Source: Trichoplax adhaerens (lineage: Eukaryota; Animalia; Placozoa). Taken from it: DNA of 64,000 nt. The stretch lies in contig NW_002060943.1 in NCBI RefSeq assembly GCF_000150275.1, forward strand, positions 408,353 to 472,352, written 5' to 3'. This document shows, piece by piece, positions 4,899 to 63,034 of the stretch. Both the position numbers and the translations under genes were made by a program. The notes beneath the pieces are model-generated. The model did no database searches, was not told the origin of the DNA, and worked only from the letters and a program-made list of their open reading frames with translations. Each line of letters opens with the position of its first letter. Positions within the stretch are counted from its first letter, which is position 1.

Positions 4899-5115
4899 GT
4901 ACAGTGTACAGTGTACAACATACAGTATATTGTACAATGTACTGTGCGGTATTGTACTGTACGGTTCAGTACAACACAGTGTATTCGTCTTAACCCTAAC
5001 CCTACTAATGGACTGTACATGTGAGCACCATGTGAATACTGTACTGTACTATACTGTACACTTGCCATCCAGTACAGTACTAATACATAGTGTTTTCCAG
5101 CTGTCCGTACCAGTA
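4899..5115. promoter_or_regulatory. GTAC/TACAGTA-rich tract at the RagA 5' end (putative promoter)
   Basis: Dense GTACAGTGTACA/TACTGTACTGTAC run ending ~30 bp before the first ATG-bearing exon (5146); includes TAACCCTAACCCTA at ~4991. Confidence 0.55.
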
Positions 5116-5514
5116 CCTCATCGACTGTGAGAGAAACGGACTTTCATGCCGGGCGAGACCGAGGTAAGTCAATGGATTGCATGATTATCCATCATTTTAT
5201 TGCTCGATAGAGGCATCAATTTGATCGATGGACGGGTAGACTAGTCCAATTGATGGTCTACTCTGTCTGGTTAATATGTCGGCCAACTAAAGTAGCCTTT
5301 TCTTAGCATAATTATGCGTTGATGGATCAATATCGATCGACATCAATTTTATCTTGATGATGATGATGATGATGAAATAATTCATCAACTTGTTGTCAAT
5401 CTTTGCTAGTCAAGAGCGACAAGTTGGACTGTTGCAATGCAATTTAATGGATATTATAAATCATTTTTAGGTCATCAATCAACATTTTACACCGATTAAT
5501 AAAGTCAAGCTATC

Positions 5515-8500
5515 ATGAAGAAGAAGGTTTGCACCTTATACCAGTATATCTATACTAGACACTTTTTCATGCTGAGAGCGAAATGGATTGCTTCCAGGAG
5601 ACCATTTACAAGCAGTCGCAAGATATCTTTCTCTATCATTCAAGTACTCTGTTATCCTATACTCTATACTGTTCTAATAGTGTAGTGGATACTGGCAATA
5701 TCGATCATAATCGATCGGCACTAGTCGATATCCTCAATCAATCAATCAATATCATTAACCAAAATCAATCTATTCAAGTGGACAATTGAATAGTACTTCG
5801 TTATGATCATAGTGACTACATCTCTTCTTGTATCATCCTGTACTATGATACATGCTCGATGCTGTTCAACTTTTGTAGTCCATACTTGAAGTATCCATAA
5901 CAGCTGATCACAACGTGTCGATATATCCTTCATAAGCATGATAGACTAAAGTTAACTTTAGGTTTGATGTAGATAAAAAGTCACGGTACAATTGGTAATA
6001 CATGTCCAAGATCATCAATTAATTATACGCATAGATGATAGGCCAAGTCCTCTAGCAATACATCTTTTTCCCTCTGTGTGTTGGACTATCATACAGTACT
6101 GTACAATATCTAGAACGCATAGATAGACTGCTATACTGCACAATGTAGTTAGTGATGGTGCAAATGGGATAGTAATCACTGTCATTTCAACAACACCGAC
6201 CGATTCAACGGAAAGCCATGCCTTGAGCTGTACAACGATAGATAATAATCCATGCGAGTATATTCAGATGGCAAGTGTCCTGTATATTTTTAAATCTACA
6301 TCATCCAATTATAATTGGATGATATAGTTTGAAACATTATATCGAAGAGACTGAAATTGAGTCAAACAGCACATTGCTAACATAACGTTATCATGTTAAA
6401 AAAATTGAAACAATTTTTACTAACTTGGATGAGCTTATTCTTTAGCAATATCATCTGTTCTCAAAGTAGTTCTTACTTTTATTGTAAGATCGAATCGTTC
6501 TTCATTGAATCCTTATCATTTTGTAATCAATATTTTTAAGTACTTTATAAGATAGTTGAAAAGGATTTGAGTACAGTATTAATTTCACAGCAGCCGATGG
6601 AGCAATAGACATCTTGCAGTGGTTAGCAATGATATCGTTGAGTGGATAACATTATAATATTATGAAATTGAAATGTTTAATATAGTGTCGCTACATAATT
6701 GAAATAGATATACAGTAAACATGACAACGTATTTCACATATACGTTGATAGTAGCATTACTATATATGTAGGCTTAATCAGCACTTTGCTCTATTTTATT
6801 GCCGATAAACAGGTATTACTGATGGGTAAGAGCGAGTCTGGCAAGACGAGCATGAGGTCAATCATATTCGCAAATTATATCGCTCGCGACACAAGACGTC
6901 TTGGAGCTACTAGTAAGTCAATTCTTTCCTCATGAATAAAAAAAATATTCAGTTTTGCCTATCAAGTTTGCGTTATCTTCATTTAATTTCACCTGACTGT
7001 ATTAGCATAATTATGATAACATACATCTGTATATATCTGTACACACAAGATTGAGAAAATTTTATAAATTTCACCTAAAATAGCCATTACGTTTAGGGTG
7101 ATAATAAGTACTGCTGTTATGCTTCAGTAATGGCACTAATATACTGTATATACTTTTTTTGCCGTGATTTCAGTTGATGTAGAACACTCTCATGTACGCT
7201 TTCTTGGTAACCTAGTACTAAATATCTGGGATTGTGGAGGGTAAGGATGAATCAGTTTTATAAATTGTTTTGTTATCATCTACGTATTTCAATAAAATGT
7301 ACTATCGTAGAGGTAGTTCAATACATCATGTACAAACTTTTATTCTTGATTCGATATGATATGGGTACTGTACTGTATATGGAGAACCAAAGACACTAAC
7401 AGTGATGTTGACACTGTCAATGATGTGAATGCTTATAATGAAAAATATTTACTTGTAGTATCCATTTATGTTACATATTGACCGTAGACGAGAATGTTGA
7501 AAATTCTAACGCGTGTAATCATATTATGTTTGTTATAGACAAGAAGCGTTTATGGAAAATTATTTTACTAGTCAACGTGATAACATATTTCGTAACGTAG
7601 AAGTTTTAATTTACGTATTTGACGTTGAAAGCAGCGAGTTAGAAAAAGACATGCATTATTATCAGACATGCTTAGAGGCAATCTTGCAAAATTCACCACA
7701 AGCCAGAATATTTTGTTTAATTCATAAAATGGATCTAGTACAAGAAGATCAGAGAGAAGCGGTAAATTACATTGAAAAATAGTTATAGACCTGTTAATTA
7801 ATAAATTCATAACTAAATCCTTCGAAATAAAAAGTAAAATATCTGTTTATCACTGCCTCGCCTTAGATCTTTCGTGAAAGAGAAGAAGACTTGAAGAGGC
7901 TATCGAGACCTCTAGAGTGCACTTGTTTCCGAACGTCTATCTGGGATGAAACATTATATAAGGTGCATTTTTGCTTTCATATATATTTAATCGTATTCAA
8001 GTAAAATTAAATTGAAGTTATTCCTCAAGGTATGCAATTCAATTCATTTCAGGCATGGTCTTCTATTGTATATCTGTTAATACCGAATATTTCTAATCTT
8101 GAAAATAATCTAAAGAAATTTACTGAAATTTTGGAAGCCGATGAAGTTTTACTGTTTGAAAAAGCAACGTTCCTGGTTGGTTGTGATACGTTTCACTTCA
8201 TTATCATCTTTGTTATGCTAAAGCTATTAATTACAATTTTATTAAGGTTATTGCTCATTGCCAAGTCAAGCAGCATCATGATATTCACAGATTTGAAAAA
8301 ATTAGTAATATTATTAAACAGTTTAAATTAAGTTGCAGGTATGTTGCTTTTTCATAAATCCGCTGACAAATAAAATTGATAATTCTGTATAGGACAATGT
8401 TGGTAGTAAGGAAGTGTTGTATGATATACGCTTGCGTCTTGCTTCAATGCTATCATACTGTACAATAAGTGGTGTATTGATAATTATCGTGAAGAGAGTG

Positions 8501-8929
8501 TATGTTAAGTGCTGACGTATTTTTTTCCCACAATTATAGTAAAATGCAGTCAAATTTTCAAAGCATGGAAGTTCGTAATTCGGAATTTGCTGCTTACGTC
8601 GAAGAATTTACCAACAATACATTTGTAATGGTAGTCATTAGCGATATTGCCATCCGTAAGTAAATTGGACACGCTGATAATTAATTAAATGAAATTAATT
8701 GATATACTTCTAACTCCGTTCGATGGGCATATATGCGCAAGTATTTATAACTTGCAGTTTATGTCACCAAATTCTACTGTACTTCAAATTAGGTTTAATT
8801 TTTATTTATGGTTATTCATTGTAACATCTTCTAGCATCGACGGCCCTCCTGATCAATATAAAAAATGCCCGAAAATATTTCGATAAGATTGAAAAGAATG
8901 ATTTACGCTCCGGTTTCCATGGAGAATAA
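5515..8929 (+). CDS. RRAGA: Ras-related GTP-binding protein RagA/B (Gtr1 orthologue), mTORC1 amino-acid sensing
   Basis: ATG 5515 MKKK | 6813 [33 protein letters not shown] | 7174 [23 protein letters not shown] | [31 protein letters not shown]...HKMD | ...[11 protein letters not shown] | AWSSIVY... | ...[15 protein letters not shown] | ...MEVRNSEF | ...GFHGE* (TAA 8927-8929). Near-identical to recalled human RagA. Confidence 0.96.
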
Positions 8930-61485: not shown

Positions 61486-61549
61486 CTTGTCGCGTGTGAT
61501 ACTTTGATCTCGTACGAGCAGACGCAGATGAGCAAGTTGATTTAGTGCT

Positions 61550-61715
61550 GTTACTGTACTCTCTTCCCCATACAGACTACAGTAGTGTGCAATACAATGT
61601 GTACACAGTACTGCAGTGTTTACAGTACGTGTACTGTAGTCTCTGATACTGATGATACAGTAGTACTGTACAGTGTACAGTACAGTGTACACTCAGTGTA
61701 CTGTACACTGTAGTC
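61550..61715. promoter_or_regulatory. GTAC-rich tract at the UQCRH 5' end
   Basis: GTACTGTACAGTGTACAGTACAGTGTACACTCAGTGTACTGTACAC and similar runs, 65-230 bp upstream of the ATG. Confidence 0.55.
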
Positions 61716-61957
61716 TGCGCAACATTACGTTATCATTTTGCACAGCTGTCCAATGTCCAGTCATGGACTGCTACACTATTTCGTGTTGGTCGTTAGCTCA
61801 TTTTTGGTAATACCATATTGAATGTGGGTAGGACTAATTAGGAACCCACACTATTCGTTTGTCCACACTAATTGCCGTCGGTCGTGTAGTCGATTTCGTC
61901 GATCTCCTTCCTTGTAGAAGAACATCTTCTACAGCACTCGAGGAATCGATGGTCCTA

Positions 61958-63034
61958 GTGTTCTGGGACCACCTTGTGATGGCGCATGCGCAGATTGACT
62001 AATGAAGACCCTCATCCTCTCTAGTCTACTGTAGACGTCTGGTACTACAAAATGTTGCAAACGCTGGGCAATTACTGTACTGTACAGTGTACACTGTACA
62101 GTATTTACTGATGGTTCTTGTGTTCTGCCACCACCTTGTGATGGCGCATGCGCAGATTGACTAATGAAGACCCTCATCCTCTCTAGTCTACTGTAGACGT
62201 CTGGTACTACAAAATGTTGCAAACGCTAGGCAATTACTGTACTGTACAGTGTACACTGTACAGTATTTACTGATGGTTCTTGTGTTCTGCCACTTTGTTA
62301 TCGCGCGTGCGCGGACTGACGAATGAAGATCCTCATTGACTCTAGTCTAGTACTACAAAATGTTGCAAACGCTGCGCAATACAGTACTGTACAGTGTACA
62401 TAGCAGCATGGAAAGTGTATACTGTACTGTAGACGTACTGTCCGTCATCCACTCTAGTCTAGTACTACAAAACGTTGCAAACGCTGCGCAATACTATGCT
62501 GTACTGTACATAGCAGCATGGACAGTGTATACTGTACGCTGTACTGAGTGGACACGTACTGTCACGTTGCCACCCAACAGGTTCGCAGGTCATACGCAGT
62601 ACACTGAGTATACTACAGTCGATTGAAAATGATGTCAACCGCCAACCGTCATCAATGGAAGCCTCATTCGTGTTTTTGTAGACACTGTAGTCAGTGTAGT
62701 GTATTTACTGATGGTCCTTGTGTTCTGTCATTTTGTTATTGCGCGTGCGCGAACGGACTCATGAAGACCTTCATTGACTCTAGTCTGGTACTACAAAACG
62801 TTGCAAACGCTGCTCAATACTGTACTGTACACAGCAGCATGGAAAGTGTACAGTACAGTACACTAGACCTGATCATTTTGCATAACGTGCTTTTAGTGTA
62901 CACGTACTATCGCACTTTTTCACTCTACAGGTTCGCAGGTCATAGGCAGTACACTGAGTACAGTACTACAGTGCAGTCGATTTGAAATGACGTCAACCGC
63001 CCAACCGTCATCCATGGAAGCCTCATCGTGTTTT
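61958..63034. repeat. Composite tandem repeat upstream of UQCRH; each unit has an NRF1-type site and a GTAC tract
   Basis: Module TGTTCTG...GCGC(A/G)TGCGC...ATGAAGA...TCTAGTCT..TACTACAAAA.GTTGCAAACGCT with the GC palindrome at 61982, 62144, 62303 and 62741. Larger duplication ~62263-62680 vs ~62700-63034; ends at the N gap. Confidence 0.9.

What the first reader, a model, noticed from the sequence alone, without database searches (positions are those of the whole stretch)
4899..62980. A (GTAC[A/T])n palindromic tract marks every housekeeping promoter in the window
Seen: dense low-complexity tracts built from overlapping palindromes (GTAC, TGTACA, TAC[A/T]GTA; ~5- and 7-nt periodicity) lie within a few hundred bp upstream of RagA (4899-5115), DCN1 (13056-13100), U2SURP (13620-13865), EIF2A (26590-26880), SPRYD7 (27960-28030), PCID2 (36450-37560) and UQCRH (61550-61715). 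Divergent pairs have one tract per gene. The spurious TVQY/YSTV/CTVH ORFs in the track map to these places. The tracts are absent at the 5' ends of the two cell-type-restricted genes (protease, TCTEX1D2) and only scattered elsewhere. Inference: a lineage-specific housekeeping-promoter code, functionally like CpG islands, read by an unknown factor or acting through DNA shape or nucleosome exclusion. I know of no metazoan core-promoter element matching it, but cannot exclude that it has been reported.
Basis: partly seen in the sequence, partly recalled or inferred. Interest (0 to 1): 0.8.

Follow-up and report, generated by a model that had tools for sequence, protein, structure and literature searches.

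The report
Known Trichoplax promoter GTAC/ACAGT repeat tracts
The dense GTAC-based tracts are real and lie just upstream of broadly used genes, but they are the promoter-linked (ACAGT)n repeat of Trichoplax, published in 2010 and tied to promoter looping and insulation in 2025-2026; what reads them is still unknown.

Summary
The window is Trichoplax adhaerens scaffold_1:408353-472352. GTACWGTAC occurs 36 times against 0.35 expected. Neighbouring GTAC cores lie 5 nt apart (spacer A/T) or 7 nt apart (spacer AGT/ACT). Dense clusters lie 30-450 nt upstream of the inferred start codons of RagA, eIF2A, SPRYD7, PCID2, UQCRH and probably U2SURP, and about 400 nt upstream of DCN1's first long coding exon. 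None occurs between 41995 and 61551, which holds the TCTEX1D2 gene and all of the lectin-protease gene seen here.

Elsewhere in the genome, 12 of 13 proteasome-subunit genes have a cluster within 2.5 kb upstream (background 0.28, p = 2e-6). Only 2 of 7 E2 genes do, so "every housekeeping promoter" is too strong.

It is not new. Wang et al. 2010 described (ACAGT)n as the dominant Trichoplax microsatellite, mostly upstream of genes and enriched at ribosomal-protein genes. Their table lists one run inside this finding. Kim et al. 2025 tied a motif at housekeeping promoters to chromatin loops. A 2026 paper tied repeating ACAGT to insulation. This scan noted the same arrays in several other windows, and one follow-up reached the same verdict.

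The tracts are not pieces of a dispersed transposon. The core heptamer equals the canonical Tc1/mariner excision footprint, an open lead.

The parts
4899..5115 (.). GTAC tract upstream of RagA. The inferred ATG at 5147 (+) is followed by a GTAAGT splice donor. Gtr1_RagA exons lie at 6708-8660.
   Evidence: The tract ends about 30 nt before the ATG.
13056..13100 (.). Short tract (3 heptamer hits) upstream of the DCN1-like gene on the minus strand. The UBA-like exon is at 12151-12672. Exon 1 was not located.
13620..13870 (.). Tract upstream of U2SURP on the plus strand. RRM and Surp exons lie at 16695-17620. The candidate ATG near 13898 is inferred, not verified.
26590..26880 (.). Tract (9 hits) upstream of eIF2A on the minus strand. 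The inferred ATG is near 26424 (MATQQQQFSPLLAGK). N-terminal exons lie at 25592-25515 and 24380-24228. The Pfam eIF2A domain lies at 22585-23295.
27960..28030 (.). Short tract upstream of SPRYD7 on the plus strand. The inferred ATG is near 28217 (M..TSVFCNC, recognised by eye; Pfam found nothing on these short exons).
36421..37409 (.). Local tandem repeat, 450 nt x 2.2 copies, with degenerate GTAC words. It starts about 210 nt upstream of the inferred PCID2 ATG (near 36211, minus strand, [11 protein letters not shown]).
   Evidence: The unit occurs only here and in a paralogous copy about 59 kb downstream on the same scaffold.
37485..37559 (.). Dense tract at the far end of the PCID2 upstream interval. 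No partner gene on the plus strand was identified.
61552..61712 (.). Tract (8 hits) upstream of UQCRH on the minus strand. The ATG at 61485 was fixed by alignment to the annotated Trichoplax sp. H2 gene.
   Evidence: The tract ends about 65 nt before the ATG.
61948..63034 (.). Tandem promoter-like modules. Some carry a GCGCATGCGC-type palindrome and most an ACTACAAAAYGTTGCAAACGC box. Each carries a GTAC tract. This part holds the only pure (ACAGT)3 run of the window, at 62848-62862.
   Evidence: In H2 the same modules fill the 1.9-kb interval between UQCRH and a divergent RhoGEF gene. The run at 62848-62862 equals scaffold_1:471200-471214 in Additional file 5 of Wang et al. 2010.
41995..61551 (.). 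Interval with no tract. It holds all of the Lectin_C+trypsin gene seen here (plus strand; exons 52852-54404; its 5' end lies before 49914 and was not located). It also holds TCTEX1D2 (plus strand, about 57004-58333).
   Evidence: Gene extents were transferred from the H2 annotation.

Best explanation
These are the promoter-proximal (ACAGT)n-type repeat tracts of the placozoan Trichoplax adhaerens.

Shown here: each tract is a 25-480 nt mosaic of the palindromic core GTAC set 5 nt apart (spacer A or T) or 7 nt apart (spacer AGT or ACT). Both orientations are mixed. The tracts sit within a few hundred bases upstream of the start codons of broadly required genes.

Inferred: the tracts work as multi-copy, strand-symmetric binding arrays for a still unidentified placozoan DNA-binding protein. 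That protein would mark constitutively active promoters. It would also underlie the promoter-promoter loops and the insulation at gene starts seen in published Micro-C data. Tract length would change by unit gain and loss.

The identification is close to certain. The protein-reader mechanism is my best guess and is untested.
For: Identity of the genome.
- The window maps to a 13,260,704-nt contig of a 105.6-Mb, 1414-contig genome.
- An NCBI Trichoplax adhaerens protein, TRIADDRAFT_18710, is recorded on a contig of exactly that length.
- The window run at 62848-62862 equals scaffold_1:471200-471214 in Wang 2010, where it is assigned to the UQCRH-like gene.

Reality of the motif.
- 36 matches against 0.35 expected.
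- Genome-wide, three GTACWGTA within 12-nt gaps give 7220 + 7263 matches. The reversed control pattern gives 0.

Promoter position.
- Six window genes have a tract 30-450 nt upstream of the inferred start codon, and DCN1 has one about 400 nt upstream of its first long exon.
- Upstream of 13 proteasome genes, hits per 500 nt peak at 60-76 between -2500 and -1000. Most other bins hold 5-20.
- 12 of 13 proteasome genes have a cluster within 2.5 kb, against a background of 0.28 (binomial p = 2.4e-6). Control intervals in the same 20 loci hold a cluster in 5 of 20 and 3 of 20.

Constraint on the core rather than on a slipping unit.
- GTAC is kept while the spacer flips between A and T in 36% of neighbouring units (31 of 87).
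- (ACAGT)6-bearing metagenome contigs mostly carry long arrays dominated by one orientation, with almost no heptamer units.

Literature.
- Wang 2010 (PMC2871265): 54% of ACAGT runs lie within 1 kb and 85% within 5 kb upstream of a gene, with enrichment at ribosomal-protein genes. The authors proposed a transcription-factor site.
- Kim 2025 (PMC12221973): a motif at loop anchors of about 3000 housekeeping (GP1) promoters, also present at orthologous promoters in three other placozoan species.
- Chimaera, NAR 2026 (PMC12817080): repeating ACGG and ACAGT tied to insulation in a sequence-to-contact-map model.
Against: - No binding protein is known, and I could not test binding.
- Isolated TACWGTA words also occur outside tracts: 154 in 204 kb, 1.66 times an order-3 Markov expectation. 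That fits a mutational process as well as a binding site.
- Neighbouring spacers are the same more often than chance (56 same, 31 different, p = 0.01), so slippage or duplication contributes.
- Not all broadly used genes carry tracts (2 of 7 E2 genes).
- The letters of the Kim et al. motif appear only in a figure I could not read. Its identity with these tracts rests on a second paper's wording and on a 7-fold enrichment of ACGGTAC words in and around the tracts.
- My only cross-species comparison is with Trichoplax sp. H2, which is 99.6% identical here and so uninformative.
Confidence: 0.55

Rival explanations
1. The tracts act through DNA mechanics without a dedicated reader. Dense TA and CA/TG steps at 5- and 7-nt spacing, plus self-complementarity, would make the duplex unusually deformable or able to extrude cruciforms. 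That would keep constitutive promoters nucleosome-poor.
For: - As single-stranded DNA the tracts fold at -12 to -29 kcal/mol, with z-scores of -1.8 to -2.6 against dinucleotide shuffles. Two control stretches gave -6.5 and -8.4 kcal/mol, with z of +1.1 and -0.7.
- The two orientations are balanced: 65 against 66 in the window, and similar in every distance bin.
- Kim et al. report accessible chromatin at the centre of the promoter hubs.
Against: - The shuffled tracts also fold well, so most of the effect comes from composition.
- Specific promoter-promoter looping is hard to get from DNA shape alone.
- The strict keeping of GTAC and of A/T over G/C spacers (272 against 21) looks more like base-specific recognition.
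Confidence: 0.15
2. The tracts are a mutational by-product with no function of their own. They would be stacked Tc1/mariner-type excision footprints and/or slippage products, accumulating where chromatin is open in the germ line, that is at constitutive promoters.
For: - The core heptamer TAC[A/T]GTA is letter for letter the canonical Sleeping Beauty excision footprint, TACAGTA or TACTGTA (PMC6943129).
- Re-insertion into a TA of a footprint followed by excision would add 5 nt (CWGTA) with a randomly repaired central base. That matches the 5-nt period, the near-equal A and T, and the frequent orientation switches.
- The 7-nt unit TACA[G/C]TGTA fits the same logic with a CAGTG terminus.
- Isolated heptamers are over-represented outside tracts.
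- Run lengths fall off roughly geometrically.
Against: - The genome holds almost no such transposons. I found one DDE_3 match, and Wang 2010 report 0.13% transposable elements and 11 degenerate Tc1/mariner pieces.
- Tc1/mariner footprints are described as 2-4 terminal nucleotides, so the 5-nt version has no precedent there.
- To my knowledge Tc1/mariner elements are not strongly promoter-targeted.
- Neighbouring units share orientation more often than independent events would.
- Kim et al. report the motif at orthologous promoters across four placozoan species, and the 2026 model links it to insulation.
- An origin as footprints would not exclude later function.
Confidence: 0.15
3. The tracts are terminal inverted repeats of Mutator-type DNA transposons, or their miniature derivatives, inserted into promoters. 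Kim et al. 2025 proposed this for their loop-anchor motif.
For: - Kim et al. report that GP1 promoters often contain annotated Mutator elements whose terminal repeats contain the motif.
- The tracts are inverted-repeat-like by nature.
Against: - Only four MULE transposase-like matches exist in 105.6 Mb. None of those I could fetch has a tract or a motif-bearing inverted repeat nearby.
- Sequences flanking the window tracts are not dispersed. Only the tract, about 30 nt, recurs across the genome.
- Wang 2010 found 6 MuDR fragments and almost no miniature inverted-repeat elements.
- Kim et al. annotated repeats with EDTA. To my knowledge EDTA calls terminal-inverted-repeat elements partly from structure, so palindromic microsatellites could be mislabelled. 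This is my inference and was not tested.
Confidence: 0.08

Closest known systems
(ACAGT)n microsatellite of Trichoplax adhaerens (Wang, Zhang, Meyer, Bao 2010, Biol Direct 5:18)
   Same: Same genome, same pentamer and same upstream-of-gene position. Both show enrichment at translation and housekeeping genes. One run of this window is in their table.
   Different: They counted only runs that qualify as microsatellites; the listed runs are 15-40 nt. In this window one pure run of 15 nt or more exists, while the tracts are mostly imperfect mosaics of 5- and 7-nt units in both orientations. The tracts are therefore much more extensive than their table shows.
Loop-anchor motif of placozoan housekeeping (GP1) promoter hubs (Kim et al. 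2025, Nature 642:1097)
   Same: Same organism and same class of promoters: broadly expressed genes, about one third of all genes. They also report presence at orthologous promoters in other placozoans.
   Different: The motif letters are only in a figure, so identity is unconfirmed. A later paper words it as repeating ACGG. Here GTAC-G-GTAC units are a 7% minority of the same tracts. Kim et al. derive the motif from Mutator repeats, which my checks do not support.
Repeating ACAGT motif linked to insulation in T. adhaerens by the Chimaera contact-map model (NAR 2026, PMC12817080)
   Same: Same pentamer and same genome, with a link to insulation. The same model also predicts insulation at gene starts.
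   Different: That link is a model-based attribution. No grammar, gene classes or reader protein are given.
Vertebrate CpG islands
   Same: A compositional promoter mark of broadly expressed genes that can be recognised from sequence alone.
   Different: There is no CpG enrichment. Tract CpG observed/expected is 0.65, against 0.95 in the rest of the sequence. The signal is a specific palindromic word, not a composition.
Drosophila housekeeping-promoter and boundary motifs (DRE/BEAF-32, Motif 1/M1BP)
   Same: Short motifs at constitutive promoters that also mark contact-domain boundaries (from general knowledge). The 2026 paper notes that the M1BP motif has an effect in its T. adhaerens model.
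   Different: The sequence is different. Here there are long multi-copy arrays rather than one or two sites, and no known binding protein.
Canonical Tc1/mariner (Sleeping Beauty) excision footprint TAC(A/T)GTA
   Same: Identical 7 letters, including the A/T ambiguity at the centre.
   Different: Footprints are single events at former insertion sites. Here hundreds are stacked at promoters, in a genome with almost no such transposons.

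Membership tests
Trichoplax (ACAGT)n promoter-proximal microsatellite (Wang 2010) | The repeat unit is ACAGT/ACTGT with a 5-nt period | tested here: met
   GTAC-to-GTAC distance is 5 nt in 293 cases, with an A/T spacer in 272. 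ACAGTACAGT occurs 114 times in 264 kb.
Trichoplax (ACAGT)n promoter-proximal microsatellite (Wang 2010) | Lies within about 1 kb upstream of a gene | tested here: met
   Six window genes have a tract 30-450 nt upstream of the inferred ATG; DCN1 has one about 400 nt upstream of its first long exon. The proteasome genes show a peak from -500 to -2500.
Trichoplax (ACAGT)n promoter-proximal microsatellite (Wang 2010) | Same genomic objects as in their list | tested here: met
   scaffold_1:471200-471214 in their Additional file 5 equals window 62848-62862 and is assigned to the UQCRH-like gene.
Placozoan GP1 loop-anchor motif (Kim 2025) | Located at promoters of broadly expressed housekeeping genes | tested here: met
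   RagA, DCN1, U2SURP, eIF2A, SPRYD7, PCID2 and UQCRH in the window, plus 12 of 13 proteasome genes. Expression breadth itself was not measured here.
Placozoan GP1 loop-anchor motif (Kim 2025) | Same motif letters | tested here: inconclusive
   The letters are absent from the text and from the supplements held. The 2026 paper words the motif as repeating ACGG. ACGGTAC words are about 7-fold concentrated in and around tracts.
Placozoan GP1 loop-anchor motif (Kim 2025) | Coincides with Micro-C loop anchors, ATAC and H3K4me3 peaks | not testable with these tools
Mutator/MULE transposon terminal repeat or miniature derivative | Belongs to a dispersed element family with shared internal or flanking sequence and a transposase source | tested here: not met
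   Four MULE matches in the genome, none with tracts nearby. The 450-nt and 321-nt stretches around the tracts recur only locally and in one paralogous block.
Mutator/MULE transposon terminal repeat or miniature derivative | 9-11 nt target-site duplications flanking the inverted repeats | not tested
   The low-complexity flanks make chance matches likely, and I did not attempt it.
CpG island | Raised CpG observed/expected and high GC | tested here: not met
   Inside tracts GC is 0.40 and CpG observed/expected is 0.65. In the rest GC is 0.33 and CpG observed/expected is 0.95.
Stack of Tc1/mariner excision footprints | The unit equals TA + terminal 2-4 nt of the element + TA, with an ambiguous central base | tested here: met
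   TACAGTA and TACTGTA are the published canonical footprints and the core word here.
Stack of Tc1/mariner excision footprints | A matching transposon family is, or was, present in the genome | tested here: inconclusive
   One DDE_3 match, an uninterrupted 361-residue frame at G000:C1409:3538201-3538524.
Ordinary slippage microsatellite | Long homogeneous arrays in one orientation | tested here: not met
   137 of 195 uninterrupted 5-nt-period runs hold just 2 GTAC cores, and 36% of neighbouring units switch orientation. In the metagenome contigs with (ACAGT)6, only 11 of 120 have three or more copies in both orientations.

The most novel reading that the evidence does not exclude
The tracts began as stacked Tc1/mariner-type excision footprints: TA-CWG-TA, and TA-CASTG-TA from an element with CAGTG termini. 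Repeated insertion and excision at open constitutive promoters would have laid them down. They were later co-opted as the anchor sites of placozoan promoter hubs. On this reading the published "Mutator terminal repeat" origin would be an artefact of structure-based repeat annotation on palindromic simple sequence.
Probability: 0.15. Interest if true: 0.6.

Novelty: already known. Interest (0 to 1): 0.28.

Why it matters
Placozoans regulate most genes from proximal promoters. About a third of those promoters form three-dimensional hubs. A simple sequence array that predicts which promoters do so is a rare case of a readable promoter-class code in an early-branching animal.

That much is already published. 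What is still open, and now sharply posed, is:
- which protein, if any, reads the GTAC arrays;
- whether the arrays are needed for looping, insulation or constitutive activity;
- where they came from.

The exact identity of the core word with a transposon excision footprint, and the weak support for the published Mutator origin, give two concrete questions to test.

Tried and rejected
Things tried that led nowhere, and ideas rejected:

1. Housekeeping versus GPCR contrast. I planned to compare 60 housekeeping genes with 60 intronless GPCRs (147 full-length 7tm_1 matches) and random loci. Only 13 proteasome and 7 E2 genes could be scored, with no independent cell-type-specific set.
2. Dispersed-transposon reading. 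Rejected.
3. Known RNA genes under the tracts. None found: no Rfam family and no tRNA.
4. A plant-type GTAC-binding SBP domain as reader. No match in the genome. The control also rang nowhere, so this is weak evidence.
5. Co-motifs near tracts. The enriched flanking words are degenerate tract words such as CAGTGTA, TACCGTA and GTCC/GGAC variants. No separate shared motif turned up across loci.
6. Cross-species test in a distant placozoan.
   - The three large protein searches gave only the near-identical Trichoplax sp. H2 locus.
   - They also gave a 4.4-kb contig of a divergent placozoan-like lectin-protease gene with no tract, which is uninformative.
   - A UQCRH locus from an unidentified non-placozoan eukaryote had one hit in 20 kb.
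   - The trypsin search gave no Trichoplax paralogues and was poor value.
7. The minus-strand ORF at 26958-27215 as the eIF2A N-terminus. No support. The real N-terminal exons lie at 26424 and below.
8. A first literature search on 8-mers returned only primers and miR-101.
9. Paper look-ups by guessed identifiers failed, and one search was a malformed query.

Full report
**What the window is.** It is 33% GC and intron-bearing.
- It maps to G000:C1414:408353-472352 in a 105.6-Mb genome of 1414 contigs. C1414 is 13,260,704 nt long.
- An NCBI protein named TRIADDRAFT_18710 [Trichoplax adhaerens] matches the window's trypsin exon. It is recorded on a contig of exactly that length.
- A coordinate in a 2010 supplementary table for T. 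adhaerens scaffold_1 lands on a matching repeat in the window.
- The window is therefore Trichoplax adhaerens, first assembly, scaffold_1.

- GTAC is about twice as frequent as composition predicts.
- The real signal is in longer words. GTACTGTA and GTACAGTA are 25-27 times over expectation.
- GTACWGTAC occurs 36 times against 0.35 in dinucleotide-preserving shuffles.
- Over the window plus 20 other loci, neighbouring GTAC cores are 5 nt apart 293 times and 7 nt apart 81 times. The Poisson expectation is about 11.
- The 5-nt spacers are A/T in 272 cases and G/C in 21. The 7-nt spacers are AGT/ACT in 51 cases.
The odd VQY/YSTV open frames are simply translations of these tracts.

**Genes and distances.** I searched exons one by one by reference and did not join any spliced model.
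- Pfam confirms RagA (+), a DCN1-like UBA exon (-), U2SURP RRM and Surp exons (+), eIF2A (-), UQCRH (-) and Tctex-1 (+).
- PCID2 and SPRYD7 I recognised by eye from conserved peptides. That is weaker evidence.
- Inferred start codons:
  - RagA at 5147.
  - eIF2A near 26424.
  - SPRYD7 near 28217.
  - PCID2 near 36211.
  - U2SURP perhaps at 13898.
  - UQCRH at 61485, fixed by alignment to the annotated Trichoplax sp. H2 gene.
- For these six genes a tract ends 30-450 nt upstream of the start codon. DCN1's first exon was not located; its tract lies about 400 nt upstream of the exon at 12151-12672.
- Because the tracts end so close to the start codons, transcription probably starts inside a tract or at its edge. 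That is inference. Wang et al. note that ACAGT is also the commonest pentamer repeat in ESTs.

**The tract-free interval.**
- Between 41995 and 61551 there is no cluster and no GTACWGTAC.
- The H2 annotation, transferred by a 98.5% alignment, places TCTEX1D2 at about 57004-58333 in the window. It places the lectin-protease gene as ending near 54400 and starting before 49914.
- In the 21.6-kb H2 locus, all five clusters lie in the 1.9-kb interval between UQCRH and a divergent RhoGEF gene. None lies at the other genes.

**Tests outside the window.**
- Three GTACWGTA within 12-nt gaps occur 7220 + 7263 times genome-wide. The reversed control occurs 0 times.
- I located the 13 proteasome-subunit genes and 23 E2 genes by Pfam.
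- Heptamer hits peak sharply between -2500 and -500 relative to the 5'-most domain exon.
- 12 of 13 proteasome genes have a cluster within 2.5 kb. The chance for a random oriented point in the window is 0.28, giving p = 2.4e-6.
- Control intervals in the same loci hold a cluster in 5 of 20 (far upstream) and 3 of 20 (downstream).
- Only 2 of 7 E2 genes qualify, so the mark is common but not universal among broadly used genes.
- I could not build the planned GPCR contrast.

**Not a dispersed element.**
- The 450-nt unit upstream of PCID2 and the modules upstream of UQCRH recur only in place and in one diverged paralogous block 52-59 kb further along the scaffold. Only the tract itself, about 30 nt, is found all over the genome.
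- MULE transposase matches number four. The ones I could read have no tract and no motif-bearing inverted repeats.

**It is already published.**
- Wang et al. 2010 (PMC2871265):
  - ACAGT is the major simple repeat of Trichoplax and makes up 78% of pentanucleotide repeats.
  - 54% of runs lie within 1 kb upstream of a gene and 85% within 5 kb.
  - Associated genes are enriched for translation, mostly ribosomal proteins.
  - The authors suggested a transcription-factor site.
  - Their Additional file 5 lists the window's only pure run.
  - They also report 0.13% transposable elements, six MuDR fragments and almost no miniature inverted-repeat elements.
- Kim et al. 2025 (PMC12221973):
  - About 3000 housekeeping (GP1) promoters form loop-mediated hubs and share a motif.
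  - The motif is present at orthologous promoters in other placozoans.
  - They ascribe it to Mutator terminal repeats annotated with EDTA.
- The Chimaera paper (PMC12817080):
  - It reports repeating ACGG and ACAGT for T. adhaerens.
  - It assigns ACGG to Kim's transposon motif and ties the motifs to insulation.
- In my data GTAC-G-GTAC units are a 7% minority of the same tracts, and ACGGTAC words concentrate about 7-fold in and around them. I think the two words belong to one tract family, but I could not read Kim's logo.
- This scan's own notebook holds at least nine first-reader notes of the same arrays in other windows. One follow-up reached the same "known since 2010" verdict.

**What the present analysis adds.**
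- The published microsatellite count understates the tracts. This window has one pure run of 15 nt or more but twelve clusters.
Orientation switches in 36% of neighbouring units.
- (ACAGT)6-bearing contigs from metagenomes mostly carry long arrays dominated by one orientation, with almost no 7-nt units. I did not identify the organisms behind those contigs. I took none of them for human and used only summary counts.
- Tracts are not CpG islands.
- They are strongly self-complementary, though largely because of their composition.

**An open lead.** An earlier first-reader note (s1-733976) pointed out a resemblance to transposon excision footprints.
- I confirmed from the literature that the canonical Sleeping Beauty footprints are exactly TACAGTA and TACTGTA.
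- Repeated insertion into a TA of a footprint followed by excision would add 5 nt with a randomly repaired central base. This is my inference.
- The 7-nt unit TACA[G/C]TGTA fits the same scheme for a CAGTG terminus.
- Against it:
  - The genome has one DDE_3 match and very few transposons.
  - A 5-nt footprint has no precedent in the source I read.
  - Neighbouring units agree in orientation more often than independent events would.
- I rate this a 15% possibility for the origin. It would not exclude present function.

**Verdict.** The feature is already known, and its mechanism is still untested.

Noticed in passing
window 63035-64000 and 3991-4906: After a 50-N gap (63035-63084), the last 916 nt of the window are 100% identical to 3991-4906. 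In Trichoplax sp. H2 a RhoGEF gene of more than 8 kb follows the UQCRH upstream modules instead, and that stretch has no match in the window. This suggests a misjoin or a collapsed segment at the gap in this assembly.
   Followed up: partly
G000:C1414:503896-504293 and 522764-523827 (52-59 kb beyond window 36421 and 61940): Diverged copies (73-93% identity) of the PCID2-upstream and UQCRH-upstream repeat units lie further along the scaffold. This points to an older segmental duplication of this gene block. Wang 2010 lists two more mcf2-like RhoGEF genes there.
   Followed up: partly
window 61948-62750; L028:8400-9550: The tandem modules upstream of UQCRH carry a GCGCATGCGC-type palindrome in some copies, which resembles an NRF1 site (from memory). 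They also carry an ACTACAAAAYGTTGCAAACGC box next to each tract. The modules are 93% identical between T. adhaerens and sp. H2, against 98.5% for the flanks, so the array evolves faster than its surroundings.
   Followed up: partly
G000:C1409:3538201-3538524 (+): This is the only Tc1-type DDE_3 match in the genome. It sits in an uninterrupted 361-residue frame. Wang 2010 mention single-copy mariner/Tc1 ORFs without terminal repeats. It is a possible domesticated transposase and was not read here.
   Followed up: no
window 61555 against L028 about 9946: The single difference between T. adhaerens and sp. H2 in the 270 nt upstream of UQCRH is an A/G change at a spacer position (GAGTACAGTAAC against GAGTACGGTAAC). 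It turns an ACAGT word into an ACGGT word.
   Followed up: no
window 43129-43327, 45644-46547 and 58869-59572: These are AT-rich tandem repeats with periods of 70, 97/57 and 234 nt. They are unrelated to the GTAC tracts. The first two lie in the gene-poor middle of the window and the third lies between TCTEX1D2 and UQCRH.
   Followed up: no
L021, L024, L025, L026 (E2 genes U1, U4, U5, U6): Four E2 ubiquitin-conjugating genes have no tract within 7.5-8 kb upstream. One of them (C1409:593144-593554) has the whole domain in a single exon. They may be specialised or retro-copied paralogues.
   Followed up: no
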